Of a stretch of DNA of 64,000 nucleotides, positions 7,110 through 60,058 are shown piece by piece (position 1 is the stretch's first letter; each line of letters opens with the position of its first letter). The stretch comes from Mytilus edulis. Taxonomy: Eukaryota. The notes beneath the pieces were generated by a model. That model made no database searches, was not told the DNA's origin, and saw nothing but the letters and a program-made list of their open reading frames with translations. A program made the translations under genes and the position numbers. The stretch is from assembly GCF_963676685.1 (NCBI RefSeq), contig NC_092351.1:88288001-88352000 (forward strand), in the 5' to 3' direction.

Positions 7110-7790
7110 TACGGAAGCCGTAAGGGGACACACAAAACATTAGAAAATATTTTTTTTAATTCGAGATCACGATAAAACATTACCGTTTTACCGAGATCTC
7201 GATAAAAAATATATCGTTATCTCGATAAAACGAAATTGTTATATCGAGATCTCGATAAAAAAATATATCGTTATCTCGATAAAACGAAACTGTTATATCG
7301 AGATCTCGGATTATTAAATCGTTATCTCGGTTTAATATATCGAGATCTCGATAAAAAAGTATATCGTTATCTCGAGAAAACGAAACTGTTATATCGAGAT
7401 CTCGGATTATTATATCGTTATCTCGAGAAACCGAAACTTTAATATATCGTTATCTCGAGAAAACGAAAGTTTAATATATCGTTATCTCGAGAAAACGAAA
7501 CTGTTATATCGAGATCTCGGATTATTAAATCGTTATCTCGGTTTAATATATCGAGATCTCGATAAAAAATATATCGCAATCTCGAGAAAACGAAACTGTT
7601 TTATCGAGATCTCGGATTATTATATCGTTATCTCGAGAAAACGAAACTGTTATATCGAGATCTCGGATTGTTATATCGTTATCTCGGATTATTTAATTGC
7701 TTCTTATCACGTGTCAACTTATTACACAATGGTGACAGTCAACACGGCGGAAAGAGTAAGTATGATTTGTGTGTTTTAAAGCTTGTTTTA
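7110..7790 (+). repeat. Left terminal inverted repeat with CpG-rich subrepeats (TATCGAGATCTCG, TATCGTTATCTCG, AAAACGAAAC)
   Basis: First ~350 bp is nearly the exact reverse complement of 34380-34730. Looser homology continues to ~7790. Confidence 0.92.
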
Positions 7791-9719
7791 TACATGATGT
7801 TATGGTGATGTGTCACTATTATAGGTGCATTTAGCTGGGAATATATGATATGCGTAAGAAATCTGTATGGCAATATCTGAATAAATCAATTGAACAAATT
7901 CGTCAATTAGTGAATGTTTACAGTATAAACAAAACATGGTAAAGTTCTCTTAGAAATCATACTGTAAACACTGAAGAACACGATCATTTCCGTCAGGAAG
8001 GTAGAAAAAGGGACAGTACTTCTTGATGGGTTGATAAATCAGCGTCCAAACTTTATAGAGGAGGTACATTTTTATGTTTTGATTGTGTTTGTTCATCCTT
8101 TAGAAGAAATATTGATATCTGTTTAATGTGCCATTGACCGTCATATGAACGATCTAGGCTCATAATCTAAGATTTGCTGTAGCGGCCATGTTTTTAATTG
8201 GACCAAAACAAAGGTAGGATTGTTGGTAACATTCCTGCATAGTTTCGTCAAAATCCGTCAAGTGGTTTCAGAGAAGAAGGTGAAAATGTAAAAGTTTACG
8301 ACGGATGACGGACGCAACGTGATGGTAAAAGCTCACACTGACTTTCAGTTAGGTGAGCTAAAAAGGATTATATTTTCATCCCAATTTTTATCAATTATGT
8401 GTATAGTAATCCTTTGGGTAAACATTTTATCAATTCAATGAGATATGAGGAACTCTTTCTTTTGAATTCTATAGTCGGATAATCGGAAGATCTGCTATAT
8501 GTATGTAGACAAAAAGACAAAAATTACAACAAAGTTCCAAAGTCATAACATTTGTATATACTAGAACACACCCGTGATATCACGGGTCCGTGACTGAATT
8601 AAAGTATATAACTATGCGTAAGCCTTATTTTAGTACTAGTATTGTCATCTGATAAAGTCATGCCGATTATAAGTTTCACAGTTTTCTCTGCTTTCAAAAT
8701 CTTTCTGTTTGAACCCGTCGACCTGGATTTTATCAGTTATTTGTAATATTGGAGTATTTTTTAATAACAGCATTGTCCTATATAGGCGAGTGTAATATTT
8801 GAAAAAGACGTCTAGTTAAGGACTTTAATGCACCCACCTAACACACGGCTAATTTCTTTTTTAAATGAAGGAATAATGATTTAACTTTGATTTTTGCCCG
8901 GTCGTCACAAAATCGTACGGTGCAGTTTTTGTAAAATTGACGTTTATTTCGGAAATTAGTTGAAAATTATAAAACTACGACATGTTTTTCAAGCAAAGGA
9001 AATTAGTCGTATCTCTTCTTTTAGACAGAATAATTAAGTGAATTAGATTCTTAGAATAATGAAAAACATTATTTACAAATGCAAATCCGCATGCTTTTGC
9101 ATTCCTTCTAAATATTTGACATTTTGTACGAAAATTTTCATAATCCTGACCTTTTCGGATCTACAATTAAATTTTTATTAAATAATTTTGCACTCTATCC
9201 GTTTTAGAACACACCAAATTACTCATCAGTTATCGTTTTTTCATTCAAGATCAAGACTTTATCTCAACATTTCTTAAAATCACGAGTTTCTGTAATTTTA
9301 TGATGTTGGGTAAAATCACTATAGTTTCCGGAATCCCTTATCTATTTCGTTATCGTTTTTTTACTGAATATATTAGTCGATTTCCGTGTACTTAATAGTG
9401 CTATTAGAGTACTATAAATCATATTTAAACGGTTCTATTTCTATCTTTAACATCAGTGTAGCTTAAATAGATATGAAATCGTCCGAAATTAAGATCAAAT
9501 TTAAGTAAAACATAATTTTTGAGTTCTGTAGAATTACCCCTTTCTAAAAAAGGAATCGTATCGGAAAATTGTAGAAAATCTTCCGAGTCGTGTCAAACTT
9601 TTCACAGTCCAGTGCACAATGAAACCATTTCTATGCTAAAAAGCAAAAACTATCCATTGATTGACATAGATATGCATAGTCTGTCATGTATTTACCACAT
9701 CGAAACTATGTAGTTAAAC

Positions 9720-10850
9720 ACTTAAATGATTGCCGCTGTGGGAAAACTAAAAGATGAAGTTTACAGAAGACTGGTCGATGAATATGAAAAAAAATTAAAA
9801 CATCCCATTTGAAAATACAAAATATCATAAGATTTGCTATAAATATTTTAAAAGTAAGCACAACCTATCATCTTCTGTTTTGTCCGCTGTACAAAGATTT
9901 TGTGCTTCATGTACCAATTCTGCCGACCAGTCTCTTCACATATATCAACGAGGGCAGTAGATCTATAACTCATTCTGATTTGTCTGTTTGTATATTTTGC
10001 AAATTTATAAAGCCTATAAGCAAGGTACACAACTTTATAAGGTATCCTTTGAGGAGCAAACTCAAGCTGTATTGAGTGTTACTACATATATCTCCTACAA
10101 TGATCTGATTTACAAAATAACTCATGATAATTTTACTATTAAATCTTTATACCATCGAGCTTGCATCGCTAAATATTTGTTACAAAATTTGAAATCAGAA
10201 AGTAAAGAGCTATTTAATTCTGAACATAAAACAGCTTTTACTAACATTTCGACGATTAAAGATGACGTGCCTGTACACAAGGAAGTATTCTGGTTAACAA
10301 CTTTAATTACTTGGTCAGTTAACCGGGCTTAATAAATTTCTGCCCCAGAATAGCCGACGAGAAAACTACAGAACATATTATCAGCTTCAACAAAAACTAA
10401 AAATATATGGTCAATTTATAGTTACATATATACAGCATCAACGAGGCCAAGGTACATCCAATATTGTATACAGTAGCTCTATAATTTTGTCTTATGCCGT
10501 AATGACGGAAAATTACTCGTTTAAAATGACAGTTATATATACAGTCTGTCAAATTCAAAGATCTGAGCAGTGACTGCGAAACTGGTTGCAAGCACTTTAT
10601 ACAGCTACTAGTATTTTACGGAAGCATATATGGGGTAAAGTTGTAATCCAATCAGATGAATATCCATTATCTAAAAACATTTCACTGGATTATTCAATTA
10701 AAATTATGCCACCTGCTTTAAAAACATTTCTGTATTGTCTTTTGGATGATGGCGCATCTGCCGCAGTTAATAAAGCGTACGATATTCCTATTGACAAAGT
10801 TCTTAGATGTATGGCGTTAGTAGAATGTATGTATATCTATAAATATTTTT
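9720..10850 (+). pseudogene. Decayed N-terminal part of an Academ-like transposase
   Basis: Fragments KYHKICYKYF, CIFCK, LYHRACIAKYLL, ATSILRKHI..MPPALKTFL across frames, with stops and frameshifts. YHxxC motifs recalled from Academ proteins. Confidence 0.6.
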
Positions 10851-13141
10851 TTTTACTCTTTTTCATTTAGGTTTATTATTACAAATGCACCGTATTTATG
10901 GACACACCTTTGATAACTATTAACAAGTTTGACTGCTCAAGAGATTAGAAAAATTGAAAATGGGGCATACATTCTACGTGGCATTATTTTTCTTCTGGGG
11001 GTCAACATTTTATCCAAGACAAGTCGACCTAACTACAGAAACAATAAAAGTTCTCCGTATGACTTTGGTTTGGTAAAAGGCAACATCGGTCCGGTATGAT
11101 GTCATCCAAATTGCTACAAGATTTGATCTGTTCACGCATTGGTATAGGTATAGGGGGAGGGTTGAGATCTCCAAAAACATGTTTAACCCCGGCGCAATTT
11201 TACGCCTGTCCCAAATCAGGAGCCTCTGGCCTTTCTTAGTTTTGTGTGATTTTTTATTATTATTTCTTGAGTATATTTCGAAGCTTAGTATGACGTCCAT
11301 TATCATTTCAAACTAGTACATTTTTGTTTATGGGCCAGCTGAAGAACGCCTCCGGGTTTGGGAGTTTCTTGCTGCATTGATGACCCATTGGTGATCTTCG
11401 GCCGTTGCCTGCTTTTTGAACGGGTTGGTGTCTCTTTGACAAATCCCTCATGTCCATTCCCAATTTTTAATTCAATCTGTATATAGTAGATCTTGTGTCC
11501 GCTTTGAGCAAAACCTCTGCTGTACTGATATATGCCCATGCCAAGGAAGTTGTCTTTGTATGGATATGTTGACCGATAAGAATGGTGAGATTACAAGTTA
11601 AAATGAAGCTATAATATTCCGATATCGCAAGATTTCGACACCTAAATGGTCCAACATCCCATTGGTCCGACGTTTCGATCATTTAGGTTATACTCTAACG
11701 GAATTTTAACATAAGAAAGCCAAATAAAAGGTTCAATATTAGGATAACCGTGTCCTCCGTTTGAAACGGTGAAACAATATATAAAAAATTAATACTTAGT
11801 GCCAAAGAAGCCGAACGTCATCACTAGCGTAATTCAAAATAAGTACAAACTACTTTGTCAAGTGTTGTTTGATTAGTTAGATATCTCAAGATACACGGCG
11901 GCCGACTAAAGTAAAATCAAACTTAGTTTGATGTACAATGAGTGATCATATTTTCCTTGTGATGTTTTATATTAAAATTGTCACAATTTTGTTGATATAA
12001 ATATACTAGTAGCACTTTACTCATTTTAGTAATGTTAGTTAGACTACTCTTATCATATCTGATTAAGTGATGTAAATGAAATTGCGATATGATCCAGACT
12101 CAACATATTGCACTACAATAATAAAATAATTCTGCCCTATGGTTGTCTGATCTTGAAGCGGTTGACAGGCTTTCAAATTAACAGGAGACCATACACTTCC
12201 TCAATTTTAATGTACAGCTCATCATGGGACTTTTCTAAACAATTCAAAATACGTCATATGTTATATTTCCCCCTTGCTTCAAATATTTTGTTTCGGATTA
12301 CTTTATATCAAATTTGCAGATATGTGTTTGTAAATACGTGCAATCAAATGATATGGAGGTATTATAAGATTTAGATAATGCAAGGGCGACTACATATACA
12401 TTTGTGTGACTTAATGGTTGATTTTCAAATATTCCGAGAGAAAACGTTACGTAACATGCGTTACCGTTAAAATCAACCAAAATTAATAAGATTTATTCCT
12501 ATGAAGAATAAATCCGGTTATCGGAGGAAAGTGGGCTTACGTTTTGGGAGTTGTCCCGCTTTGAACACGTGGTGGAACTTGTTATGTATTATGAGTCACG
12601 TTAATTATTTTAACCTTGATAACTGTGACGTCATCATTCTTTCTTTACCACGTACGATACAGCAGAGGGAAGACGCAAAAAATTGGGTTCTGTATGAATT
12701 AACTAATGTTTGTTTTATGATGACTCCAGAACTTAGGAATGAAGTTGTTCAGATTGTCAATGGCAATGCCCTTATTCACTCTCCAGCTACTGTTAGTGTT
12801 ACATCTCCTGACTCAGTCAATGAAAGGCAACAATCGAATACAGGTATAACACAAAGTTCTAATATTTGCCAATAACTAGTGCAAATGGTAATCTATGTTT
12901 AAATGTTTCACAAATCTCGGAACAAAATAATTAATGGTGAATATGTAGATTTAGGTATATATTGCTTTAATACAAATTCAGGCACAGAACAGTAGATACA
13001 AATGGACAGCTGATTATCCAAACTAAACTAAGTAAAAAGATTACTGATATTAACACATGGATAGATGCTTTCCTTATTTACATAAGTATTTATGTTGGTG
13101 TACATTTAGAAGATGCACCTAACTTAACCGAATACATACAT

Positions 13142-13400
13142 GTTAAAATATTTTGTGTATCCGTGTTTCTAGTGCAAAATTTACAAAATCTCTCATTAGA
13201 GGGTATTGTTGGTCTTGCATACCTACCAGTTTCTATTGATAATGAGTGGGCACTTATTCTTAATTTAGTGATAAATAAAAAGTTAACCACAGTTTCCATC
13301 TTTTATCTTAAGATAGTTCAAATTTAATTTAATTTTGTAGAAATCTTCTAGTTTCTGTTTGAAATTACTATTACAATGCTTGTTAAAGGGTATTCCAATA
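13142..13400 (-). mobile_element. LINE ORF2 3' fragment
   Basis: KLRISAHSLSIETGRY..ERFCKFC, the same motif class as 35460-35620. Confidence 0.7.
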
Positions 13401-13537
13401 TATTTCATTAATTCAGATAATTTATTAGACCACAAATTTTCTCTGTACTAAGTTGATATTTTAATAGGATTGATTGATTGTTGGTTGCTTAATGTCCAGT
13501 GGCAAATATTTCAGGCATATCTATCAGGACAAATATT

Positions 13538-15890
13538 TACACAGTGTCTGTAAATTGTGTCATTTTAGGATAATTTAGTTTGTATCAAGCAGATACATTG
13601 TTATGACACAGTGTCTGTAAATTATGTCTTTTTAGAATAACTTAGTTTGTATCAAGGAGATATTCTGGTAGAACACAGTGTCTGTAAATTGTGTCTTTTT
13701 AGGATAATCTAGTTTGTATCAATTAGATCCATTGATAGGACAAAGTGTATGTAAATTGTGTCTTTTAAGGATAATATAGTTGTATCAAGTAGATACATTG
13801 ATATGACACAGTGTCTGTAAATTGTGTCTTTTAAGGATACTATAGTTTGTATCAAGTAGATATGTTGATAGGACAGTGTCTGTAAATTGTGTTTTTTAAG
13901 GATAATATAGTTTGTATCAAGTAGATATGTTGATAGGACATAGTGTGTTTAATTGTGTCTTTTAAGGATAATATAGTTTGTATCAAGTAGATATGTTGAT
14001 AGGACACAGTGTCTGTAAATTGTGTCTTTTAAGGATAATATAGTTTGTATCAAGTAGATATGTTGATAGGACAGTGTCTGTAAATTGTGTCTTTTAAGGA
14101 TAATATAGTTTGTATCAAGTAGATATGTTGATAGGACACAGTGTCTGTAAATTGTGTCTTTTTAGGATAATTTAGTTTGTATCAAGTAGATACATTGATA
14201 TTACACAGTGTCTGTAAATTGTGTCTTTTTAGGATAATTTAGTTTGTATCAAGTAGATACATTGATAGGACAGTGTCTGTAAATTGTGTCTTTTAAAAAT
14301 AATTTAGTTTGTAGATATGTTGATAGGACAGTGTCGGTAAATTGTGTTTTTTAAGGATAATTTAGTTTGTATCAAGTAGATACATTGATAAGATACAGTT
14401 TCTGTAAATTGTGTCTTTTTAGGATAATTTAGTTTGTATCAAGTAGATATGTTGATAGGACACAGTGTCTGTAAATTGTGTCTTTTAAGGATAATATAGT
14501 TTGTATCAAGTAGATATGTTGATAGGACACAGTGTCTGTAAATTGTGTCTTTTAAGGATATTTTAGTTTGTATCAAGTAGATACATTGATATGACACAGT
14601 GTCTGTAAATTGTGTCTTTTAAGGATAATTTAGTTTGTATCAAGTAGATATGTTGATAGGATACAGTTTGTGTAAATTGTGTCTTTTAAGGATAATTGAG
14701 TTTGTTTGTATCAAGTAGATATATTGATATGACACAGTGTCTGTAAATTGTGTCTTTTAAGGATATTTTAGTTTGTATCAAGTAGATACATTGATATGAC
14801 ACAGTGTCTGTAAATTGTGTCTTTTAAGGATATTTAGTTTGTATCAAGTAGATACATAGATAGGACACAGTGTCTGTAAATTGTGTCGTTTAAGGATAAT
14901 TTAGTTTGTATCAAGTAGATACATTGATATGACACAGTGTCTGTAAATTGTGTCTGATAAGGATAATTTAGTTTGTATCAAGTAGATACATTGATAGGAC
15001 AAAGTGTCTGTAAATTGTGTCTTTTCAGGATAATTTAGTTTGTATCTAGTAGATACATTGATATGACACAGTGTCTGTAAATTGTGTCGTTTAAGGATAA
15101 TTTAGTTTGTATCAAGTAGATACATTGATATGACACAGTGTCTGTAAATTATGTCTTTTAAGGATAATTTAGTTTGTATCAAGTAGATACATTGTTAGGA
15201 AACAGTGTCTGTAAATTGTGTCTTATGAGGATAATTTAGTTTGTATCAAGTAGATACATTGATAGGACAAAGTGTCTGTAAATTGTGTCTTTTAAGGATA
15301 ATTTAGTTTGTATCAAGTAGATACATTGATAAGACACAGTGTCTGTAAATTGTGTCGTTTAAGGATGATTTAGTTTGTATCAAGTAGATACATTGATATG
15401 ACACAGTGTCTGTAAATTATGTCTTTTAAGGATAATTTAGTTTGTATCAAGTAGATACATTGAAAAGTTTGTATCAAGTAGGATACAAACTGTATCCTAT
15501 CAATGTCTGTAAATTGTGTATTTTAAGGATAATTTAGTTTGTATCAAGTAGATACATTGATAGGACACAGTGTCTGTAAATTGTGTATTTTTAGGATAAT
15601 TTAGTTTGTATCAAGTAGATACATTGATAGGACACAGTGTCTGTAAATTGTGTATTTTAAGGATAATTTAGTTTGTATCAAGTAGATACATTGATAGGAC
15701 ACAGTGTCTGTAAATTGTGTATTTTAAGGATAATTTAGTTTGTATCAAGTAGATACATTGATAGGACACGGTGTCTGTAAATTGTGTATTTTAAGGATAA
15801 TTTAGTTTGTATCAAGTAGATACATTGATAGGACACAGTGTCTGTAAATTGTTCCTTTTTAGTATTTTTGATTTGTATCAAGTAGATACA
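13538..15890. repeat. 67-bp satellite array, about 35 copies
   Basis: Consensus ACACAGTGTCTGTAAATTGTGTCTTTTAAGGATAATTTAGTTTGTATCAAGTAGATACATTGATAGG. Period measured from 15541 to 15608. Confidence 0.95.
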
Positions 15891-21769: not shown

Positions 21770-22678
21770 AAATGAAAGAGATACAAAATAAATAAATTGG
21801 TTTATGCTCTCGCTCTTTTGTATTTGCATGTAGTGATATACAAAGCAGTACCTTACGAAAATGGGTGTAACCGATGTTCTTCTATCACACAGGTACAAAA
21901 TATGGTAGTTTTTTTTTTTTATAAAGATCTTGGCTTTTGACTTTGTAAACGTTCCAAAATGATACGTGGAAATAACCATGCTAATGATTTTTGTTGTATA
22001 TCAGACCGAGTGCGTACATATATAGGTCTTTTGATACTTGAACTGTCAATCAACTGTTTGCTAATTACACTTGTTCCATCTTGTTCCGTATGTCAATTCT
22101 CTGAGATATTCTCCAATGCTTCTCTTTCTTTTGCTCTATCTCACACCGTATCCAAACGTTGGTCTTTTGTTCTTTTTGCTAAAAAAAATTCTTCTTCTTT
22201 TGCGCTCTCTTGCACCGTATCCCAACCTTTTTCTTTTCTTCTTTTAGCTCAAAATAGCTCTCCTCTCACAACTTATCCCCACCTTTGTCTGTTGTTTTTT
22301 TTTTCTCGCTCCAATGGGCTCTTTTCCGTTCCTATTCCCGGTACCCCCGGTGATCTACACTGCTCTGATCCGTGCTCACAACCTTGCTTTTCCTACTTTT
22401 GGCGTTATTTTGACAGCAAAGGAGGAGAAGAGAGACTGTGGCCGATGCAAAATGTAACCATGAGTCGTATGAGCAAGGCAACGAGTCATACGAAAAAGCC
22501 ACGAGTCGTATGAGCAACCATACGAGTAGTATGAGGTACCCTGCGAGCAACGACTCTCTCGGTCTCTTTCACTCACTTGTTAGGTGTTTGTGTCTTGTGT
22601 CCAAAATTCCTCAAAAATAGACATGAGTCGTATTAGCATAGCTTTGAGCACTATGAGCAACATTTCGATTCGTATGAA

Positions 22679-23450
22679 AAAGAGTGGACACACTGAAATG
22701 TCTCGCCTGTTCCAGTGTTCATAATATAACTTATGTTGTAAGTATAAAAAACAAGTTTAAACCACAAGCATTATAAATAAATTAACATTTAAATGATCAA
22801 TGTACATGAGACGAAGGTGAGATAAACCCTTTCAGACAGAAATGTAGTTCATGCACTCATTCCATACAACAAATCTAGTTTACCTATTGCTAAAAGTATC
22901 TCCGAATAAACCTCTTAAAAAATAACCTTGACCATGAAATATAGGTCAAGATCAACTTACACCTACTTAACAGACATACACACCTTACAATTATTCCCTA
23001 CACCAAATATAGTTATACTATCCCTTTAGTATCTGAAAGAAGGCCAAATCAGATAAATGTAACATTGGCCAATGAACCATGACCTTGAGGTCAAGGTCAA
23101 ATGATTATTGTCAGAATGGAATCCATACACGAAATATAATTGACTTCTGAGAAATAGACCATATCACAAATTTTTAATTTGGCCAGTCAACCATGAAAAA
23201 GAGGTCAAGGTCAGATTATTATTGACAGACAGACATGTACACCTTACAAACATTCCATACACCAAATATAATTGACTGGATACTTATAGTATCTGCAAAA
23301 TAGACCAAAACACCAAAAAAAATATACTTTGACCACTGAATCATGAAAATGAGGTCACGGTCAGATGTCACCTGCCAGTTGGACATGAACAACTTACAAT
23401 CATTGCACAACCAATTATAGAAGACCTATTGCTTTATAGATATGGACTTA
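22679..23450. mobile_element. Decayed copy of the HINE-like element at 2638-3732
   Basis: Shares AAGAGTG.ACAC.CTGAAATGTCTCGCC and the CCATGAAAA.GAGGTCAAGGTCA cores. Confidence 0.7.
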
Positions 23451-26400
23451 TAAAAAAGAAGATGTGGTATGATTGCCAATGAGACAACTATCCACAAAAG
23501 ACCAAAATGACACAGACATTAACAACTATAGGTCATCGTACGGCCTTCAACAATGAGCAAAGCCCATACCGCATAGTCAGCTATAAGAGGCCCCGATAAG
23601 ACACGGAAGCTTTCAAATATTCCCACGCAACTAAATTAGCAAATAAATCTGTCGTTCGTCATTACTGTGAAGTTTCAAAACATTTAGCCTAACAGTTTCA
23701 GAGGAGAAGATTTTAGAAAATCGGCCAATGAGAATCTAAGATTTGCTATAGCGACCCTGTTTTTCATTGGACCAGAACAAAAATAAGTAAGTTCGTAAAG
23801 AACCTTCAACTGAACATTCCTATAAAGTTTCGTTTAAATCCGTCCAGTGGTTTCAAAGAAGAAGATGAAAATGTGAAAAGATTACGACGGACGACGGATG
23901 CAACTTGATGGTCAGGTGAGCTTAAAATGTAGCATAAGGACATGAAAGATAGACTGTGCCAAGTTCAAAGTAAATCCCTTCAGTGGTTTTTGAGAGAAAA
24001 TTTTCGGAATGTTAACAGCGGGCGACATACGATGGAAAGCAAAAGCACAAATAGTCTTCGGCTAGGTATACTAAGCTAAAAAATAAATATCATGAAATCT
24101 CCTTCAATATCTTTATTTGGTCAACAAAACTGACAAAATAATATAAAGCTGAAAAATGGGGGCCCGTATGCATAACACATCTTAAGGTTATATTTGTTCG
24201 TAAAGGACAGTTTTTTCTTCAAAAGCAATGGACGTCTACTGGTACTCTAAATGGAATTCTTAACTTCAGTATTTTTATGAATACAGGCTCAGGCCATTCT
24301 CAGTAATGCATCATACTCAGTACATTTTATATATTGAACTGAAAAGCAAACTTAATCATGTTTACTTAATAATATTTACATTAAAAAGTTACATTCAGTG
24401 CATATGATATTAAAGTTTTAATAAAGAAAAAAAGCTAAAAACTTTATGATCTTATTTAAATTGGTCTAAATTTGAAAAAAATGAAAACAAAATTTCGACA
24501 GGAATACCTCTGACTCAGAAAAAAAGTGTAATTCACACGGAATAAAAGTGTCAACGAGTTAAAATAATGGTGGAAAGGTTATTTATTGGTTACATGCCTA
24601 AAATTACCCCAGTTGCTGGAAACTACTCTGATACTTTCAGAAAGTACTCCTACAGCTTATTAAAAAAAAGGCAAAAAAGGGACATATCTTCCAAGACGAG
24701 ACATTGGAGCAATGTAATTAATATGCTGACCAATATTTTGATAGCTTTACTGCTTTACAAATACTGAGTCTACCCTCATGATCTATTTCAAGCCATTTGA
24801 ACATTGTTAGTAAACCCTTTAGATTATGTTTACCTAGTTAAGATCAGGACCCTTTTGATTTTTACAGGGTCAAAGATTTTAATATGTTTATGACATATTT
24901 TAATGCCATTTGAACCATGCATGTTTATTTTGTTGAGACAAGTATACACTCTACAGTTATAATCTTCAGTTAAACATATCTAGATTCAGTCAGGCCAGTC
25001 ACTCAAAGGATGCTGCAGTGATCTAGCATTGATGTAAGCATGGTTAAACAATGTGCATTTAGTCCCTGACAAATTTACATTTTGTTGATTCTTCTTTGAA
25101 TCATTACATGAAATCATACAATACAATCTTAAAACAATGTGCATCTAGTCCCTGACAAATTTACATTTTGTCGATTCTTCTTTGAATCATTACATGAAAT
25201 CATACAATACCAACTTATTGAATGTAAGTGATAAAAGCAAAAGAAAGGAATGTCCAAACTTCAATCAAAGAAGTGACTAAACATAATCCATCTCCCACAT
25301 GTTTGTTTTGAATATGTTCATAAAGTCTTCTCTGAGGTCAGCAACAGACTCATAACAAGATGGCAGTTGTGGCATATTCCCACAAGTCTGAGCTGTGGGT
25401 CTCCTCTCAAAACCTGAAAGCATACTAAATGCTACATTTAATTGGTAACACATGAGGTTTGATCCAGTACAAAAACGCATAAAGTTTTGAAGTCCTTTCT
25501 CGTCTAAACTTTTTATAAACTTTTAACGATAACCAGCCACAATCTGTTCTTTGAGTTCAAGAACATCAGGAAACTTTAGAAGTTTCAACACTTTTGCAAC
25601 TGTTGGGTTCTTGTCTTCATAAACTCTTGAACTCTTAGCTGGACTGTTTGTGGAGTTAATGATGAAGTCTTTGAAGGTGATTCATTTGATGGATCAGAAG
25701 ATAAGTTAGCGACTTGTTTATTTACTTGTAGTAATTTGTGATCAGGTAAACTATCATCGGATGGAGATTCCATTTCAGAACAGCCCACAACAGTTGTTGG
25801 TAACTTCTTGCTGTATATGTAAAATCGTAGAAGTTTTGATCCTGTCAAAGTATATAGGTCTCCAATTGTGCAATCATTGTCCATTCTGCCTCCCATAAAA
25901 TTTCTGACTTCAAATTGAAAATCTGTTACGTTTCCTCTTTTCGATTTGCCATTCAGGAAAAATACCTTCTTCCCATGTTGCAGGATATCATCTTGCATCC
26001 AGGTCTTCGGTGCATTGATGTATCTTACGCCTCCACCATTTAGTGTCCTGACTTGACGATATTCACTACTTCTGTAATCGTAATCAAACCACCCAATTTC
26101 AATCTTCCTCTCTTGCTTTTTGGCATTGTCATTCCCTTTCAGCTTTCAATAAAGAATGAAGAACGAATGTACAAAAACAAAGAAATTAAACAACTAAACA
26201 CTCTTTATTCAATGTTTACTTTTTAGCTCATTTTTTTTCAATTGCTAAATATGTGATAAATAGATTATTATTCACTGTAAATTATTCCTGTACATGCACA
26301 CAGTTGCTTACATTACTCAGTTGCTTACCCATGCTACACTACACAAGTATTGGTACTCCAGATCTATATAGTGGAGGAAAGAATAAAGAAGAAGAAGAAT

Positions 26401-27721: not shown

Positions 27722-27922
27722 ATAAATAAACTCATCATAGATACCAGGACAAAATTTAGTATATACGCCAGACGCGCGTTTCGTCTACAAAAGACTCATC
27801 ATTGACGCTCGAATCCAAAAAAGTTAAAAAGGCCAAATAAAGTACAAAGTTGAAGAGCATTGAGGACCAAAATTCATAAAAGTTTTGCCAAATCCAGCTA
27901 AGGTAATCTATGCCTGAGGTAG
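27722..27922 (+). repeat. Interspersed repeat family D (ATAAACTCATCATAGATACCAGGAC...)
   Basis: Reverse-complement relatives at 45400-45460 and 45790-46215. Confidence 0.65.
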
Positions 27923-30640
27923 TATAAAGTACCCCAAATTATAATGTAGTATTGTGTATTGAAATGTGAATATACATGTAATAATGATAATGTACCTTCT
28001 CTTCTCCAATTGTTTGTATTGATTCATCTGATGCATTTCCATTTCTTAAAAATTCAAATACTTCACAGTAGTCATCCATTTCTTTCTGTAAAACAAAGAC
28101 AAATATCAATATGATAATAACATCAAGAGTAATAACAAAATTACCGAACTGATGAGCAAAAATCCAGGGCAGTAGTCAATAAATAAAAACAATAAATTTA
28201 AAAAATCGATAAATAACGCTTATCAGGGGCAATAACTCTTCCATGGAGAAAACACATACCTTTGAATTCAATTAAATAATATTAAATCAGGCCGTTGCGC
28301 AAAAATATGGAAATTCGCCAACAATGGGAGAAAAGATGTTCCCCATTTTGAGAAACAGATAATCGTATGGAAAACTTTACTTTAGTTTTTGGGGTTATGG
28401 CTGATTAAGTTATACTCAACCAGCACTGACTTAAACATGCTTACTTCAGACTTTTTCATATTCACGACGGGTATTCCTGGCACACGGAACCGCAATATCC
28501 ATAGCACAGAGTTCTAGTTCTGTAGGTCAGTAGTGAGAATGTGGATCTAGGGAGTCCTCTGCTTTCAGAGATTGACGGAATCGAGATGGCACATAGATTG
28601 TGGACATGTCACAATGAATGCACACTTACTGTCTGTGTATTAAATCTGGACAGAAAGGACCGTAGGCAAATAAAACTCTGTTGAGTCAGAAAATTTCAGT
28701 GCGTGAAATTTTATTTATTTATTGCACACATCGAAACAAAGCATGTTTTTCCCAAGATACAGGAATTTACGGTTAATCCAGCTATTTTGGAGAAGGGCAG
28801 CACTGTTGCATGGACCATTTGATTTTCAGGGGTGGGGGGATGGGTTGGCTTTTCATGTGGACCCAGATTTTTTTCCCCAGCAAATTTAGGGCCAGGATAA
28901 TTTTATCTAAGAAAACCCAGATGCCTCCCCCCTCCCCCTCAGAAAAATCAAATGGTCTGTACCTTTGAGGCCCACTTTTCTCTTTGAGCATGTTGAGATC
29001 AATTTATTCCACCCTTCCTGGACAAATAATTTCCCCCCTCAAATTTCAGGATATTATAAATAGTCAGGCCCCCTGAAGTAAAAATGGTCGGTCCTTTAGG
29101 GATATTTGAACTTGAATCCGGGTCTGTTTGCTCTAATTCACGTTGCCCTAGGACCTGTTCACTCTACTTCTTGTTTGTCCTATGTCCGTTCACTCTGATG
29201 TTTCATACATGTTTCATATATTTTATTGTTTGTTGGAAATTCCACCAACTTTTTATCTTGTTTTTGCTGTATATTTTCTCATTTAATTTATCTGCAAGTT
29301 ATGTAATCACTGTGATACAATTTTATTGTATTGTCTAAATTGTTTTACATGTATATACGTTTGTGTGCTTTGTGATTTTTTTCCCTTCATAAAGTTGTTT
29401 TACTGTATTGAGACTTTAAATCAAGGTGTGTCATGACTTATCGTGTTCTGTATTTGATCACATTTATACATTTTATACATTAACTCGGAGAGAACAGACA
29501 CCATGTATTTTCTCTTCATAATATATAAATGGTTTTACATTACGAATTTTTGGGCCCCTTTATAGCTGGCTGTTCCATGTGAGCCAAGGCTCTGTGTTGA
29601 AGGCCGTACCTTGACCTATAATGGTTTACTTTTATAAATTGTTATTTGGATGGAGAGTTGTCTCATTGGCATTCACACCACATCTTCCTATATCTACATG
29701 TATCATGTCTATGTATATATGTTACAGTGAATTTGTATAATCAGGCATTATGTAGAATCCCTGATTTTTATGGGAATATGTAGAATCACTGAAATCATTA
29801 GTAATTATATATAATCCCTGAAAATGACCAGTGATTTTACATACTCACTGAACATGTTAATGATTATTATACAAACTCCCTAATATGATTTCAGGGATAA
29901 TCAATAATTTAAGATTCCTTTGTTTAATAATCTTATTTTAATATAATAGACAAATTATAATATTTTTCTTTCATATTCCTTTCCAAATGAGATAAATCTG
30001 CTTTTAAACACAGAGGGTGATCTTAAAGATATAACTTACAGGGTTTTTAGAAAAAGTTGAAGCTGACTTCACAATTACTAAAGTATTTTTAATTGGAAAC
30101 GAACCTAGGGCGAACGAAATCCATGGGCGAACGAATCCACCACAAACTGACCTAGGCCAGGGCGAACATGTAACTAGAGTGAAACGGTCCAGTTACCCTT
30201 TAACTTGAAATGCCGGAGTGAGGAGGGGGGGGATTTGATTTATTTTTCTCAGTAAGAATATGGATTTATAACGTTGGTGAGACAATGCCAGAACATTTAA
30301 TTATTCTTTGAGATGGCATTATTATTCTGTATGAAAGATCTTTGCATACAGCATAATAATGCCACCTCAGAAAAGATCCTCTATCAAATTCGTAGGAAGT
30401 CATCCCAGAAAAAAAATAATTAAAAAAGCCTTGCCAGACGTCATATGCATAGACGTAGAAAGGCGTCCCAGAAAAAAAATTAAAATAGCCTTGCCAGACG
30501 TCATAATTATTTTGACTAGTCTTTTTCCTGAAAAGTCAGGATCGCAATGAGTGTTGTTTGTTTCGGAACTTTAAACAAAAGCCCCCCTGTTTAAGATTTA
30601 AATGGTCGGTCCTTTATAAAACTTAGTATGGCTGATCACT

Positions 30641-32548
30641 GGTATCCGGTCGTTCCGGCCCCAAACCGATCCGGCCCCAAGTCAATCCGGCCCCAAGTCG
30701 ATCCGGCCCAAGTCGTTCCGGCCCACGTCGATCCGGCCCCATAATAAAATATGAATAAACTATATTCACTATATGGAGGAATTTGTGACAAATTTGAACT
30801 GTATAAACGGAATTTGCAAAAAGTGTCGATGATGGATCACAACAGGTAAACGAAGTATTGAAGTACCAGTTAAAGAACTACTTTAAATCGATACGTAACT
30901 GAGTGTTAGTTTAGTCTTAGATGCATGATTTTTTTATTAGTTGTTAGTGGCTTTGAACTATAGTTATTGTGTCTATTTGTACAGCAGCTCCAATGATATT
31001 TTAAAATGTGAAGATATTTTCAAAGTTGACTTTGAATGTCATGGCGATTTTTATTTTATTTACTTCTCACACAGAGTAGCTCAATAAATATTTACAGTCC
31101 AATGGAACCGTAAAAATTTAACTCATCATTAATGTCTTGTTTAACCAAATCATTAGTCTATAATTGGTTTGTTTATTCAATAATTGTCTGATGATTGTGA
31201 ACTAAGGTAATGCCAATCGTAATCACTTAATTCAATCAAATCCTGATTAATTAAAGTTACGTTATCAACAAGGTCTTTGTAGTTTGATCTTTTGTTTGGT
31301 GTTTGGTGTTTATATAATAATAATTAATTGTATTTTTTTCAGGTAACATCAGAGGCTTCTATAACACATGTTACACTTGTTTTTCTTTTGTAATATCGAA
31401 TATAGTCAATTTATTTTTTTCTTAAAATTGACAATACTTTGAATAGTTGTGTGTAGATAAAATAAACCCAAGTAATATGAGTATCCATTATTCTTTATTG
31501 CAAGAAAATAACAAACCAAAGACACTAAATGCACATGTTGGTCCCATAATACACAAGGAAAAGCCATTGTGATATAAAAACAAACGCATTCTGTCTTCTC
31601 TTTTATAGAAAGAACTAGGCAAATCTAACAACATTTCTCAATTTGAGAATTTTAAGAACTTTTAAAAAAGAAAAACAAAATTTGTATGTATCAGCTTGGG
31701 GATCGGCCTGTACCGTTGTGTATGTAGCTATTTGTTATAACACAAGATAAAAGACGTATTGGATTACAGTCGGCGTTTTACGTTTCCGCAAAAAAAAAAA
31801 TCTACGTTTCCGCAAAAAAAAAGTCTACGTTTCCGGAAATAAATACCTTACTACTTTTCCGCGAAAATAGTAACCATTCCGGAAAAAATATATTAAAGAT
31901 AATTAATCTGAGTACCTTGAACCGTTGATTGTAGTAGCATGAAATTTTTGTAATAGCAGTATGCATTGCGCATTTAAAGTCAATTTATCTACCTCGGGCT
32001 GGAGATTTAGTCTTCGGGTTGTGCACAAATCAATAAGCAGATCCCACATTTTGATAAAAAGTGGAAGTAACACAAACACAAGAGGAATGAAGTTGCCATT
32101 TTACACCCATGTATCGAATAGTTAACCGTGCCATCCATGCAAATATCACTTGAGTTATTTCATTACATAGACAATCAAAGACATTTCAAGTTGGCGAAAC
32201 ACAAAAATATAACGATTCCGACATCATCATCTTTCACTAAGGTGAAACTTTCATATTTTTTTTACTTCTAGTATATTGTAGATAGAAGATCAGAACCCTT
32301 TTTGTATGCTCATCTAAAGAAAATATTTTTCAAAGGCCTTTTTTTTTTACCGTACACAGTACACCTTTTACATTATAATTAAAAGAAATCAGAAACATTT
32401 ATGAATTACAATTAATATATATCTTTATTTTTATTCCTTATAAATATATTTTTTATTGGGGCCGGATCGACTTTACATATGGGCCGGATAGACGTGGGGC
32501 CGGATCGACTTGGGCCGGATCGACGTGGGGCCGGATCGACCCGAACGC
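30641..32548. mobile_element. Non-autonomous foldback/MULE-like DNA transposon
   Basis: Inverted terminal arrays of GTCGATCCGGCCCC units (30646-30741 vs 32458-32541). Perfect 9-bp TSD CTGATCACT (30632-30640, 32549-32557). Confidence 0.85.
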
Positions 32549-33239
32549 CTGATCACTTAACATCTTGAATGTGTCGAAGTGACTGCAAACTTCTGCAAAA
32601 ATAGTGGTGAAAAATACGCTATATTCTAACATGTCTTACCTAGTTCATGGAAAGTATAATAAAGGGGAAAGATACGAACCTTATTGTATGTGTATAATAC
32701 CTCCTACTAAGGAGCATCACCATAAGGTATGCTGTAGAGGAGGACATATTAGCACATTGTTTCGGGCCGTGACAGATTAATGTGAGCATTTGCCTATCCA
32801 GTTTCAAAGACAGGCCGTAACGGGTCTTACTAACAGAAAGTTAACCATCCCAAAACTTAAATAAACAATACAAGACCATGCTTGCATAATTAAATGCATG
32901 CATGTTAGGGTGCCATTAAAACAAGAAATGAAACAAAACGAAACGTAACGAAACGAATTAATAACCGAAACAAAACAAAACACATTGAAATAAAATAAGA
33001 ATTTGAGTAATACACTAAAAGAGAAATAACTTTATTAGCCTCATATACCATATATATACGAACCCATAAATACATTGACACTCACCATAGGCACTTGTCT
33101 CAGAATTTTCAAGCTATTATATGTATATCTTTTTTACCAAGAGTTTTTGGAAATCGTTTTTATATATCATATCTCATAACTATATATAGGGTCTATATTT
33201 TTGACTGAAATAGTTTAGGTACATCGCAAAATACGCATA

Positions 33240-33830
33240 TAAAAAAAAGAAGAGGTGGTATGCTTCCCAATGAGAAAACTCTCCACAAGGGACCAAAAAT
33301 GACACAGAAATTAACAACTATAGGTCACCGTACGGCCTTTTACAATGAGCAAAGCTCATACCGCATAGTCAGTTGTAAAAGGCCCCGAAATGACAAATGT
33401 AAAACAATGCAAACAAGAAAACTAAGGCCCTAATTAATGTATAATAAATGAACGAAAAATAAATATGTTTGTTTAATGTGTTACATATTTGTATTTCGTT
33501 CATTTTTTATATAAATAAGGTCGTTAGTTTTCTCGTTTGAAATGTTTTATATTGTCATATCGGGGCCTTCTATAGCTGAGTATGCGGTATGGAATTTGCT
33601 CATTGTTGAAGGCCGGACGGTGATCTATAGTTGTTAATTGTGGAGAGTTGTCTCATTGGCAATTATACCACCTCTTATTTTCTATATGTAACACAACAAC
33701 AAACGACAACCACTGAATTACAGGCTCCTGACTTGGGACAGGCACATACATACATAATGTGGCGGGGTTAAACATGTTAGCCGGATCCCAACCCTCCCTT
33801 AACCTAGGACAGTGGTGTAACAGTACAAGT
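33240..33830. repeat. Interspersed repeat family C (AAAGAAGATGTGGTATGATTGCCAATGAGACAACT...), here with an internal inversion
   Basis: Copies at 23450-23600, 29550-29690 (reverse), 38730-39290, 44925-45005, 58175-58606 (reverse). Confidence 0.75.
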
Positions 33831-34039
33831 TCTACATAAGACATGTTTGTTTACTGTAAAAATTGACTAATTGACGAATTTGTGAAATTGCTTCACTCAC
33901 ATATTGCCATACAGATTTCTTACCCGTATCATATGTTCCTATGTGAATGCACCTATAATAGTGAAACATCCTGATCACATCAAATATTGGAAGTAACTTT
34001 CCGGGCTTCTTTATCATGCATATCGAGTGAACAGTCATT

Positions 34040-34730
34040 CAAACAAGCTTTGAAACACACAAATCATACTTACTCCTTCCGCCGGGTTGCCTGCCACCTC
34101 TTGATCCGCCATTTTGTAATCAGTTAACAAGTGATAACTAACAATCCGAGATCTCGATTAAATAATCCGAGATAACGATATAATAATCCGAGATCTCAAT
34201 ATAACAGTTTCGTTTTCTCGAGATAACGATATATTAAAGTTTCGTTTTCTCGAGATAACGATATAATAATCCGAGATCTCAATATAACAGTTTCGTTTTC
34301 TCAAGATAACGATATATTAAAGTTTCGTTTTCTCGAGATAACGATATAATAATCCGAGATCTCGATATAACAGTTTCGTTATTTCGAGATAACGATATAT
34401 TAAAGTTTCGTTTTCTCGAGATAACGATATCATAATCCGAGATCTCGATATAACAGTTTCGTTTTCTCGAGATAACGATATATTTTTTATCGAGATCTCG
34501 ATATATTAAACCGAGATAACGATTTAATAATCCGAGATCTCGATATAACAGTTTCGTTTTATCGAAATAACGATATATTTTTTATCGAGATCTCGATATA
34601 ACAATTTCGTTTTATCGAGATAACGATATATTTTTTATCGAGATCTCGGTAAAACGGTAATGTTTTATCGTGATCTCGAATTAAAAAAAATATTTTCTAA
34701 TGTTTTGTGTGTCCCCTTACGGCTTCCGTA
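34040..34730 (-). repeat. Right terminal inverted repeat
   Basis: Reverse complement of 7110-7790 with a different order and number of inner subrepeats. Confidence 0.92.
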
Positions 34731-34736
34731 AAATAG

Positions 34737-34756
34737 TGATTATCTATTTGAATTAA

Positions 34757-34792
<36 letters not shown>

Positions 34793-60016: not shown

Positions 60017-60058
60017 CCTGCTTTTCAGACCGATACCTGTAGGAAAGAATGAAATAAA

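What the first reader, a model, noticed from the sequence alone, without database searches (positions are those of the whole stretch)
7110..34730. 27.6-kb IS3-like eukaryotic DNA transposon pairing a DDE integrase with a HECT ubiquitin ligase
Seen: exact TIR ends, a perfect 6-bp TSD, an intact spliced DDE integrase (plus strand) and a convergent HECT-ligase gene remnant (minus strand) keeping the catalytic Cys motif (PTAQTCG), all splitting a LINE ORF. Knowledge: TAY..RTA ends with a 6-bp TSD are how I recall the little-studied IS3EU superfamily, so the superfamily itself is probably not new. Inference: the E3 ligase is a dedicated accessory gene, possibly an anti-silencing factor or a regulator of transposase turnover. 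Gene annotators would mislabel it as a host G2E3-like gene.
Basis: partly seen in the sequence, partly recalled or inferred. Interest (0 to 1): 0.85.

Follow-up and report, generated by a model that had tools for sequence, protein, structure and literature searches.

The report
Mussel IS3EU transposon carrying HECT ligase
This is a young copy of an IS3EU/GingerRoot DNA transposon in the blue mussel whose family pairs its integrase-type transposase with its own HECT-type ubiquitin-ligase gene, a pairing that also appears in killifish and that I could not find described in the searchable literature.

Summary
Window 7110-34730 is one copy of a multi-copy DNA transposon of Mytilus edulis. It has 153-nt perfect inverted ends (TACGG..CCGTA), a perfect 6-bp target duplication (AAATAG), an intact two-exon DD35E integrase and a convergent HECT-ligase remnant, all inside a LINE. 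The ends, the duplication and the transposase place it in the known IS3EU/GingerRoot superfamily.

The core element is about 16 kb; the rest is nested insertions. The HECT gene here is broken: residues 30-134 and 320-645 are missing. Three sister copies keep a 733-codon frame, two of them without a stop, for a 761-aa protein with a helical N-terminal domain, a ubiquitin-like domain and a complete HECT fold. The catalytic Cys is present in 25 of 25 relatives.

The accessory-gene inference is strongly supported. Of 36 integrase loci at 42% identity or more to this one, 31 have a HECT-like ORF within 30 kb, always tail-to-tail. Divergence of the two genes tracks (rho 0.94). In two killifish species the two genes carry consecutive RefSeq numbers on the same scaffolds. 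Both genes appear in transcript-like contigs from four studies, with the integrase intron precisely removed.

What the ligase does is untested. No paper found links IS3EU with HECT. I rate it a new variant of a known kind.

The parts
7104..7109 (.). Left copy of the 6-bp target-site duplication (AAATAG)
   Evidence: The uninterrupted paralogous LINE units read AAAAAG.
7110..7262 (+). Left terminal inverted repeat, starting TACGGAAGCC
   Evidence: 153 nt, 100% complementary to 34578-34730. About 40 near-identical ends occur in the genome.
7166..7665 (.). Left subterminal repeat array. Units of about 51 and 96 bp carry the palindrome CGAGATCTCG. Candidate transposase-binding sites (inferred).
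   Evidence: The motif occurs 7 times in the window against 0.01 expected, only in the two arms.
8784..18331 (.). Nested insertion of an unrelated TIR element with ends AGGCGAGTG..CACTCGCCT. It is not part of the family core. 12488-18046 is specific to this copy.
   Evidence: Absent from 6 of 7 sister copies and partly shared with the closest copy, on C4.
18888..19667 (+). Integrase/transposase exon 1 (an N-terminal region ahead of the core, and the DD35E core)
   Evidence: 100% identical to P0007 residues 1-260. Pfam rva_4. The exon ends CAG|GT.
19668..21445 (+). Integrase intron (GT..AG), containing a very abundant genomic repeat at about 20560-21159
   Evidence: Contigs from 4 runs of 4 studies skip exactly this stretch, and 3 of them leave most of the intron uncovered; cover there is mainly the abundant repeat.
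21446..21769 (+). Integrase exon 2 plus the TGA stop
24098..25279 (-). Likely 3' untranslated region of the HECT gene: covered by transcript-like contigs downstream of the stop
   Evidence: Contigs from all 4 runs cover about 24098-25559, while most of 21960-24090 is uncovered in the 3 small runs apart from abundant repeats. Contigs cannot show strand.
25280..25627 (-). HECT C-lobe remnant (residues 646-761 of the intact protein) with the catalytic Cys motif PTAQTCG. It is out of frame with the upstream piece.
   Evidence: tblastn gives 95% identity in frame -1. Pfam HECT E = 1.2e-3.
25624..26145 (-). Ubiquitin-like domain and the start of the linker of the HECT gene (residues 135-319)
   Evidence: tblastn gives 85% identity in frame -2. 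The domain model has pLDDT 92 and a beta-grasp fold.
27993..28079 (-). Exon 1 of the HECT gene (residues 1-29, start of the helical N-terminal domain)
   Evidence: tblastn gives 72% identity.
30391..32554 (.). Extra segment shared only with the closest copy (C4). Not part of the core.
34147..34650 (.). Right subterminal repeat array, mirror image of the left one
34578..34730 (-). Right terminal inverted repeat, ending GGCTTCCGTA
34731..34736 (.). Right copy of the target-site duplication (AAATAG)

Best explanation
**Shown**
- Window 7110-34730 is a recently inserted copy of an IS3EU/GingerRoot-superfamily cut-and-paste DNA transposon of Mytilus edulis.
- The family core is about 16 kb. It has 153-bp TIRs followed by arrays of a CGAGATCTCG palindrome and carries two convergent genes.
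  - One is a two-exon, 367-aa DD35E integrase-type transposase.
  - The other is a 761-aa protein with a helical N-terminal domain, a ubiquitin-like beta-grasp domain, a disordered linker and a complete HECT domain with its catalytic Cys.
- In this copy the transposase ORF is intact. The HECT gene is a remnant that lost residues 30-134 and 320-645, so it keeps the ubiquitin-like domain and the C-lobe in different frames.
- Five sister copies share the 320-645 deletion. Three others keep a 733-codon frame, and in two of them it has no stop.
- The composite element, with its nested insert, transposed after the nesting.

**Inferred**
- The HECT protein is an active E3 ubiquitin ligase that the transposon lineage has kept under selection as its second gene. 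It can act in trans, because HECT-deleted copies have multiplied.
- My preferred mechanism (about 45%) is that it ubiquitinates a host protein that restrains the element, such as a silencing, chromatin or repair factor.
- The main alternative (about 25%) is that it ubiquitinates the transposase itself, to clear the stable post-integration complex or limit its dose.
- The palindrome arrays are the likely transposase-binding sites.
For: **Boundaries and family**
- Perfect 153-nt TIR.
- 8 of 8 full copies have perfect 6-bp duplications and identical TACGG..CCGTA ends.
- Published IS3EU/GingerRoot features are TA..TA or TAYGG..CCRTA ends, 6-bp duplications and 100-150-bp TIRs (PMC10045372, PMC12730594, PMC6839031).

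**Transposase**
- Pfam rva_4, E = 9e-28.
- 23 of 25 family members hit NCBIfam's IS3 model and 20 of 25 hit IS481, weakly.
- The splice agrees with P0007 and is colinear with the zebrafish homologue.

**HECT protein**
- Pfam HECT in 26 of 28 family members. A family profile hits only HECT ligases in the PDB, TOM1 at 5.5e-9.
- The AF2 model has pLDDT above 90 over residues 435-758. Foldseek matches whole HECT domains at probability 1.0, E = 6e-11.
- The catalytic Cys is present in 25 of 25 sequences that cover the column.
- The ubiquitin-like domain scores Z = 9.1 against the polycomb ULD, with the other top matches largely ubiquitin-like (UBL) domains.

**Linkage**
- 31 of 36 integrase loci at 42% identity or more have a HECT-like ORF within 30 kb, all convergent. 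Counting 8 more distant loci that I added, the figure is 39 of 44. Spearman rho for the identities is 0.94.
- Long open frames of 649-733 aa persist in lineages only 32-54% identical.
- Consecutive or near-consecutive RefSeq numbers for the two genes on the same scaffolds give six pairs. Two are in Fundulus heteroclitus (LOC118561812/13; XP_036001702-3/706). Four are in Cyprinodon tularosa (LOC119788216/17, LOC119796675/76, XP_038147794/95, LOC119794643/45).

**Expression**
- The spliced integrase junction appears in contigs of 4 runs from 4 studies, and the HECT gene's 3' part is covered in all 4.

**Youth**
- Copies are 98.4-99.7% identical.
Against: - Ligase activity, substrates and any effect on transposition are untested.
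- Within-family divergence is too low for dN/dS. I could not fetch DNA of the diverged lineages, so selection is inferred from conserved ORFs and residues only.
- The HECT-deleted subfamily has more copies (6) than the intact one (3). The ligase is therefore not needed in cis and could be dispensable.
- 5 of 36 related integrase loci show no HECT partner. More distant integrase lineages (32-36% identity) showed none in the scored candidates.
- Fish adjacency rests on annotation numbering, not on inspected DNA. No TIRs were checked there.
- The run type 'RNA' was a guess by the tool. The splice junction with an uncovered intron argues for RNA.
- Repbase entries for IS3EU could not be consulted.
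Confidence: 0.8

Rival explanations
1. The ligase acts on the transposase itself. As with ClpX on MuA, or proteasomal removal of retroviral integrase (established examples, cited from my own knowledge), the element's HECT protein would ubiquitinate the integrase. That would disassemble the stable strand-transfer complex so the 6-bp gaps can be repaired, or would cap transposase dose.
For: The pair is tightly co-inherited and divergence of the two genes tracks. The ligase carries protein-interaction modules, a helical N-terminal domain and a ubiquitin-like domain. Both genes appear in the same transcript-like data sets.
Against: No evidence of contact: the complex prediction gave no verdict, which counts neither way. 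HECT-deleted copies have multiplied, though trans supply would allow that.
Confidence: 0.25
2. The HECT gene is a passenger: a host gene captured once by an ancestral element and carried along without benefit to the transposon.
For: Gene capture by DNA transposons is common, and GingerRoot elements carry gene fragments (PMC6839031). HECT-deleted derivatives are more numerous here than intact ones. An independent truncation exists in the 60%-identity lineage.
Against: Full-length ORFs of 649-733 aa, the domain architecture and the catalytic Cys persist across lineages down to about 32% identity and into fish. Orientation and spacing are conserved in 39 of 39 pairs. A neutral passenger would decay.
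Confidence: 0.1
3. The HECT fragments belong to a separate insertion with its own boundaries, nested by chance in this copy.
For: This copy does contain unrelated nested insertions (8784-18331; 30391-32554).
Against: The gene sits at the same place and orientation in all 9 copies of the family that were examined. It also does so in lineages with 42-61% integrase identity. In sister copies the alignment runs on into the flanking core with no break at the gene's 3' end.
Confidence: 0.02
4. The element belongs to another integrase-bearing group with 6-bp duplications (Polinton/Maverick) or to Ginger1/Ginger2, not to IS3EU.
For: Polintons also make 6-bp duplications and can exceed 15 kb. The transposase is integrase-like.
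Against: Ends are TA..TA, not AG..TC or TG..CA (PMC6839031). There is no ORF of 110 aa or more beyond the two genes in the cores, so no polymerase, ATPase, protease or capsid genes. The Pfam family is rva_4, with only marginal rve.
Confidence: 0.03

Closest known systems
[quoted passage not shown] 2019, PMC6839031; Kojima 2023, PMC10045372)
   Same: TA..TA termini, here the TAYGG..CCRTA form reported for fungal IS3EU. 6-bp target duplication without an evident target consensus in 8 copies. TIRs of about 150 bp. An integrase-like DDE transposase with no HHCC zinc finger evident on my reading of the sequence and with weak similarity to IS3/IS481. The superfamily is already reported from bivalves and fish.
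   Different: This family carries a second, convergent gene for a HECT-type ligase. The papers I could search describe a single transposase in GingerRoot, or an alpha-kinase with or without TET/JBP in fungal IS3EU, and never mention HECT or ubiquitin. The transposase gene has an intron.
Fungal IS3EU families with alpha-kinase and TET/JBP dioxygenase genes (Kojima 2025, PMC12730594)
   Same: Same superfamily and the same end motif. An accessory enzyme gene lies in opposite orientation to the transposase. The proposed role there is escape from host silencing.
   Different: The accessory enzyme is different (HECT ligase, not a kinase or dioxygenase) and the hosts are animals. TET/JBP genes moved between superfamilies, whereas here the HECT gene's divergence tracks the transposase.
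Cellular HECT E3 ubiquitin ligases (HUWE1, TOM1, UBR5, NEDD4 family, E6AP)
   Same: A two-lobed HECT fold over about 325 residues. The catalytic Cys lies in an xHTCx-type motif followed by LxLPxY.
   Different: Only 11-16% identity to solved HECT domains. The N-terminal architecture differs: a helical domain plus a ubiquitin-like domain, with none of the usual substrate-binding modules detected (WW, C2 and the like). The gene is multi-copy and bounded by TIRs.
   Same: A C-terminal HECT-type domain. 'G2E3' expansions or repeat-derived G2E3 matches are reported in a sea cucumber and a sculpin (PMC9700323, PMC5638112) and could be this kind of gene. That is a lead I did not test.
   Different: No zinc-finger or PHD match in any of 28 family members. 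From my own knowledge, G2E3 has N-terminal PHD/RING-like fingers. The records I retrieved are labelled 'uncharacterized' or 'HECT domain-containing', not G2E3.

Membership tests
IS3EU/GingerRoot | 5'-TA..TA-3' termini (TAYGG..CCRTA in fungal IS3EU) | tested here: met
   TACGG..CCGTA in the window and 7 sister copies. Feature as stated in PMC10045372, PMC12730594 and PMC6839031.
IS3EU/GingerRoot | 6-bp target-site duplication | tested here: met
   8 of 8 full copies and 3 of 5 short derivatives have perfect 6-bp duplications, all different.
IS3EU/GingerRoot | Terminal inverted repeats of roughly 100-150 bp (GingerRoot) or more than 30 bp (fungal IS3EU) | tested here: met
   153 nt at 100%.
IS3EU/GingerRoot | DDE transposase of the integrase/IS3/IS481 kind, without the HHCC zinc finger | tested here: met
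   Pfam rva_4 at 9e-28 with marginal rve. NCBIfam IS3 in 23 of 25 and IS481 in 20 of 25 members, all far below the cut-off. D..D..35..E spacing and absence of an HHCC motif were read directly from P0007.
IS3EU/GingerRoot | Transposase groups with reference IS3EU/GingerRoot transposases in a phylogeny | tested here: inconclusive
   No Repbase sequences are available here. By eye, short motifs (KLxxYG, IDxxS, RxDxGxE, PFIxGxSTxNxxIExxW) match the GingerRoot DDE sequence printed in PMC6839031.
HECT E3 ubiquitin ligase | Two-lobed HECT fold | tested here: met
   For the intact sister protein P0001, Foldseek gives probability 1.0 and E = 6e-11 over about 365-390 columns to whole HECT domains. Pfam scores 27.7 bits against a cut-off of 23.9. 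The window's own remnant keeps only the C-lobe (19 bits, below the cut-off).
HECT E3 ubiquitin ligase | Catalytic cysteine in the C-lobe | tested here: met
   Cys727 of P0001 aligns to the TOM1 catalytic motif. It is present in 25 of 25 sequences covering the column and in the window remnant.
HECT E3 ubiquitin ligase | Ubiquitin thioester formation and transfer | not testable with these tools
   Needs biochemistry.
G2E3 orthologue | N-terminal PHD/RING-like zinc fingers before the HECT domain (feature recalled from my own knowledge) | tested here: not met
   Pfam finds only HECT in 26 of 28 members and no zinc-finger family. The model shows a helical N-terminal domain and a ubiquitin-like domain instead.
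Polinton/Maverick | Protein-primed DNA polymerase B, packaging ATPase, protease and capsid genes; AG..TC termini | tested here: not met
   No further ORF of 110 aa or more is shared by the cores. No Pfam hits on the other ORFs tested. Termini are TA..TA.

The most novel reading that the evidence does not exclude
A whole clade of animal IS3EU/GingerRoot transposons, present at least in bivalves and teleosts, may encode its own active HECT-type E3 ubiquitin ligase as a long-standing second gene, with a helical N-terminal domain and a ubiquitin-like domain ahead of the HECT domain. That would make it, to my knowledge, the first DNA transposon group shown to bring a ubiquitin ligase, used to degrade a host restriction factor or to recycle its own transposase. 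Many multi-copy 'HECT domain-containing', 'uncharacterized' or 'G2E3-like' genes in fish and invertebrate annotations would then be transposon genes, not host family expansions.
Probability: 0.45. Interest if true: 0.75.

Novelty: new variant of a known kind. Interest (0 to 1): 0.62.

Why it matters
- **A new kind of transposon accessory gene.** Known accessory genes such as anti-silencing factors and TET/JBP dioxygenases show how mobile elements fight host control. A transposon-borne HECT ligase would add ubiquitin-dependent protein removal to that list. Viruses use this strategy, but I know of no report for DNA transposons.
- **A tractable system.** The family is young and appears transcribed, with intact and naturally HECT-deleted copies side by side in one genome.
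- **A practical consequence for annotation.** The family has at least 792 clusters (at 50% identity) with E below 1e-30. The named members I retrieved come from fish, a sea star and mussels and are annotated as ordinary host genes, which can inflate 'gene family expansions' in comparative genomics.

Tried and rejected
- **Fetching DNA of diverged lineages.**
  - Between-lineage dN/dS, TIR/duplication checks of the diverged lineages and gene trees from DNA were therefore not possible.
- **Within-family dN/dS.** There are only 0-5 synonymous differences per comparison, so the result is uninformative.
- **Profile search of the 5.8-billion-protein set with alignment A2.** It returned only the three Mytilus proteins, apparently because low-complexity words swamped the candidates.
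- **Complex prediction.** Integrase against the N-terminal half and the HECT domain gave no verdict (ipSAE 0.08 and 0.23, mark 0.34). This is no evidence either way.
- **Protein Atlas on the ubiquitin-like domain.** The only hit was an unnamed mollusc cluster at 0.78, a lead at best.
- **Single-sequence PDB search of the intact protein.** Marginal hits only. The family profile was needed.
- **Earlier-findings search.** It returned only this same finding.
- **Supplement of the GingerRoot paper.** Not held.
- **Third conserved gene in the right arm.** None found. A 117-131-aa ORF near the right end is shared by three copies only and is not open in the window.
- **Spliced models.** The spliced integrase and HECT proteins used are database proteins returned by the tools (P0007, P0001).

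Full report
**1. What is in the window**

7110-7262 and 34578-34730 are 153 nt and 100% complementary. They begin TACGG and end CCGTA.

Inside them lie mirrored arrays (7166-7665 and about 34147-34650) of 51- and 96-bp units carrying the palindrome CGAGATCTCG. The motif occurs 7 times in the window against 0.01 expected, only in these arms.

AAATAG flanks both ends, at 7104-7109 and 34731-34736. The element sits in a LINE, with an RT domain at 6348-6989 (E = 5e-22) and a weak endonuclease match at 4767-5456. A LINE segment of about 105 bp is repeated three times here. The two uninterrupted units read ...GCAAGAAAAAAAGTGATTATC... and act as empty sites, confirming a 6-bp duplication.

**2. It is a multi-copy, young family**

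The window is C8:88288001-88352000 of a 1.37-Gb assembly. Source names on the encoded proteins identify it as Mytilus edulis.

- The 153-nt end occurs about 40 times at 93-100% identity. Pairing the ends gives about 11 long copies (15.6-30 kb) and several short derivatives of 0.5-1.5 kb.
- I fetched seven long copies. All have the same termini and perfect, different 6-bp duplications: TTGAAA, CATTTC, GTATGT, AAAAAC, TTAATA, GCTTTC, GATTGA. Three of five short derivatives also have perfect 6-bp duplications.
- Copy-to-copy alignment shows a core of about 15.6-16.5 kb.
- The window copy adds a 9.5-kb nested element at 8784-18331 with its own ends AGGCGAGTG..CACTCGCCT. It also adds about 2.2 kb at 30391-32554 and lacks about 0.8 kb at 23604.
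- Its closest relative, C4:23819027-23841784, is 99.5-99.7% identical and shares the first 3.7 kb of the nested element at the same position, yet has a different duplication. The composite element, more than 22 kb long, therefore transposed after the nesting.
- Other copies are 98.4-99.2% identical over the integrase half.

**3. The transposase**

- Exon 1 (18888-19667) ends CAG|GT. Exon 2 (21446-21766, then TGA) follows a pyrimidine tract and AG.
- tblastn finds exon 1 100% identical to the annotated 367-aa M. edulis protein P0007. The exon-2 hit is 97% because it runs 15 nt into the intron.
- Across the junction the protein is colinear with single proteins of zebrafish and a firefly.
- It matches Pfam rva_4 (E = 9e-28) and only marginally rve.
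- The catalytic residues can be read as WHLD, RGD and, 35 residues on, RIE.
- Of 25 family members, 23 hit NCBIfam's IS3 transposase model and 20 the IS481 model. These hits are weak, 1e-6 at best.
- Relatives at 44-50% identity occur in teleosts, insects, molluscs and a crinoid.

**4. Superfamily**

Published definitions fit:
- IS3EU has TA..TA termini and usually 6-bp duplications, and forms one clade with GingerRoot (PMC10045372).
- Fungal IS3EU end TAYGG..CCRTA (PMC12730594).
- GingerRoot has 6-bp duplications, TA..TA ends and 100-150-bp TIRs, and relatives in fish, corals and oyster (PMC6839031).

Short motifs of the GingerRoot DDE sequence printed in that paper are recognisable in this transposase by eye. 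Polinton and Ginger are excluded by the termini and by the absence of any further genes.

**5. The second gene**

On the minus strand the window holds three pieces of one gene:

| Window coordinates | Residues of the intact protein | Identity |
|---|---|---|
| 28079-27993 | 1-29 | 72% |
| 26145-25624 | 135-319 | 85% |
| 25627-25280 | 646-761 | 95% |

The last two pieces are in different frames. Residues 30-134 and 320-645 are missing. The last piece carries PTAQTCG.

Five other copies share the 320-645 deletion. Three copies keep a 733-codon frame: C5:39692184, C2:64937758 and C1:23767742. The first two have no stop and the third has one. With a short upstream exon this frame gives the annotated 761-aa protein P0001.

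- P0001 passes Pfam's HECT cut-off (27.7 against 23.9 bits). So do 26 of 28 family members, at E = 2e-9 at best.
- A family profile finds only HECT ligases in the PDB (TOM1 at 5.5e-9, then UBE3C, HUWE1, RSP5, E6AP). The catalytic motifs align.
- An AlphaFold model has three confident domains: residues 1-83 helical, 145-250 beta-rich, and 435-758 at pLDDT 90-98.
- The last domain matches whole HECT domains in Foldseek: HUWE1, TOM1, UBR5 and NEDD4, with probability 1.0 and E = 6e-11.
- Modelled alone, the middle domain (pLDDT 92) is a ubiquitin-like beta-grasp fold. It scores Z = 9.1 against the polycomb ULD, and its other top matches are largely ubiquitin-like (UBL) domains such as USP11 UBL, ATG12, SUMO and UFM1.
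- I read the N-terminal five-helix domain as SAM-like from its sequence pattern only. That was not tested.
- The catalytic Cys is present in all 25 relatives that cover the column, within the motif RRPxAHTCGxxLELPxxY.

**6. Is the ligase gene part of the transposon?**

Genome-wide six-frame searches with the integrase exon, the ligase pieces and Pfam HECT were cross-tabulated.

- Of the 36 integrase loci at 42% identity or more to this one, 31 have a HECT-like ORF within 30 kb.
- Eight more distant loci that I added bring the total to 39 of 44. I chose those eight because a partner was visible, so they are not an unbiased sample.
- All 39 pairs are tail-to-tail, typically 4.7-10 kb apart.

| Integrase identity | Ligase identity |
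|---|---|
| about 60% | about 54% |
| about 50% | about 40% |
| 42% | 32% |
| about 31% | about 26% |

Spearman rho is 0.94 over 27 loci, but copies within a lineage are not independent. Diverged lineages keep open frames of 649-699 aa in several copies each. The gene has no ends of its own.

**7. Beyond mussels**

- A cichlid protein aligns with P0001 over its whole length and all three domains.
- An exhaustive profile search finds 792 clusters at 50% identity with E below 1e-30, and 2504 with E below 1e-10.
- Named members come from several teleosts, with many paralogous loci per genome, and from a sea star.
- I could not fetch those loci. However, in two killifish species the ligase-like and integrase genes have consecutive or near-consecutive RefSeq identifiers on scaffolds of identical length, six pairs in all.
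  - Fundulus heteroclitus: LOC118561812/LOC118561813 and XP_036001702-3/XP_036001706.
  - Cyprinodon tularosa: LOC119788216/17, LOC119796675/76, XP_038147794/95 and LOC119794643/45.
- That points to the same gene pair in vertebrates. Whether TIRs enclose them there is untested.

**8. Expression**

Small public runs hold the integrase exon. The tool only guessed their type as RNA. I laid contigs from four runs of four studies on 19560-25559.

- Each run has a contig joining 19667 to 21446, a GT..AG skip of 1778 nt. In three runs most of the intron is uncovered; what cover there is falls mainly on the abundant repeat at about 20560-21159.
- All four runs cover about 24098-25559, the 3' part of the ligase gene.
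- Most of the intergenic stretch is empty apart from very abundant repeats.
- I read this as two separate transcripts from the family. Because copies are about 99% alike, it does not show that this particular copy is expressed.

**9. Mechanism**

Shown:
- A bounded, recently mobile IS3EU element with an intact transposase that appears transcribed.
- A conserved companion gene with a complete HECT fold and its catalytic Cys.
- A ligase-deleted subfamily of six copies, including this one, alongside three copies that keep the long frame.

Inferred:
- The transposase binds the palindrome arrays and makes cuts staggered by 6 bp.
- The ligase is active and helps the element, and it can act in trans.
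- I favour a host target, such as a silencing, chromatin or repair factor (about 45%). This is by analogy with the fungal IS3EU TET/JBP genes (PMC12730594) and with viral use of ubiquitin ligases.
- Self-directed turnover or disassembly of the integrase complex is the main alternative (about 25%).
- A complex prediction between integrase and ligase parts gave no verdict.

Between the two subfamilies the integrase half is 98-99% identical, but everything to the right of the deletion is 87-96% identical or unalignable. The deleted form is therefore probably a recombinant, not a simple deletion.

**10. Novelty**

The superfamily is known. Opposite-strand accessory genes are known for fungal IS3EU. 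None of the IS3EU or GingerRoot papers I read mentions HECT or ubiquitin, and combined full-text searches found nothing relevant.

Reports of 'G2E3' expansion in a sea cucumber and of G2E3-like unclassified repeats in a sculpin may be the same phenomenon, but I did not test this. Repbase notes could not be checked. I therefore rate it a new variant of a known kind, with interest 0.62.

**11. Limits**

- DNA of the diverged lineages and of other species could not be fetched.
- dN/dS within the family is uninformative.
- No exon joining was done by me.

Noticed in passing
window 7040-7109 and 34731-34990: The host LINE carries a unit of about 105 bp repeated three times, each followed by an A-run. 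The transposon sits in the first unit, and the other two are natural empty sites (AAAAAG where the duplication reads AAATAG).
   Followed up: partly
window 8784-18331: A nested TIR element has ends AGGCGAGTG..CACTCGCCT, imperfect TIRs of about 75 bp and a short AT-rich duplication. It has no Pfam-recognisable ORF. 12488-18046 is present only in this copy.
   Followed up: partly
window 59030-61165 (-): Adjacent ORFs carry RNase H, a Dam-like DNA methyltransferase and a tyrosine recombinase. This is the gene set of a DIRS-type retroelement.
   Followed up: partly
window 61934-63928 (-); 37448-38503 (-); 54043-55215 (+): A 665-aa single-exon DUF229 (sulfatase-like) ORF, and two HSP70-like ORFs with weak Pfam matches. 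Further ORFs with the AIDFGTTYSGYAF motif lie at 44499-44891 and 49212-49553.
   Followed up: partly
window 20560-21159 and 23160-23759: Two segments, one inside the integrase intron and one in the intergenic spacer, belong to extremely abundant repeats. Summed contig depth there reaches 10^4-10^5, against 10-80 for the genes. Most sister copies have about 0.8 kb more of the second repeat at 23604.
   Followed up: no
genome: C5:57046065, C11:72787428, C12:77408624: The 60%-identity lineage has its own truncated ligase gene, with 203-223-aa frames keeping only the N-terminal and ubiquitin-like part, next to intact integrases. Loss of the HECT domain with retention of the ubiquitin-like part has therefore happened twice.
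   Followed up: no
genome: e.g. C7:42308677(+)/42322133(-), C10:17511028/17525410, C14:19454072/19467865: A distant integrase lineage (32% identity, 436-aa frames) occurs as inverted pairs about 14 kb apart, as if the transposase gene lay inside very long inverted repeats.
   Followed up: no
genome: C13:49419704-49450022: This copy of the family appears to host a nested element of a distant IS3EU-like lineage, with an integrase at C13:49425321 (31% identity) and a weak ligase-like ORF at 49441565.
   Followed up: no
proteins P0054 and cluster members: One integrase cluster at 90% identity or more spans four fish genera (Cyprinodon, Salarias, Fundulus, Xyrichtys). This hints at horizontal transfer among teleosts.
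   Followed up: no
protein P0138; one member of alignment A2: A ligase-family protein is deposited under a 'Candidatus Thiodiazotropha' MAG, a bivalve symbiont, and is probably host DNA in the bin. Another family member carries a UCH/USP deubiquitinase domain (E = 4e-36).
   Followed up: no
genome: C12:37114262 and C1921:14226: The flanks of these two unpaired ends are reverse complements of each other. The small contig C1921 is therefore probably an alternative haplotype of the C12 locus.
   Followed up: no
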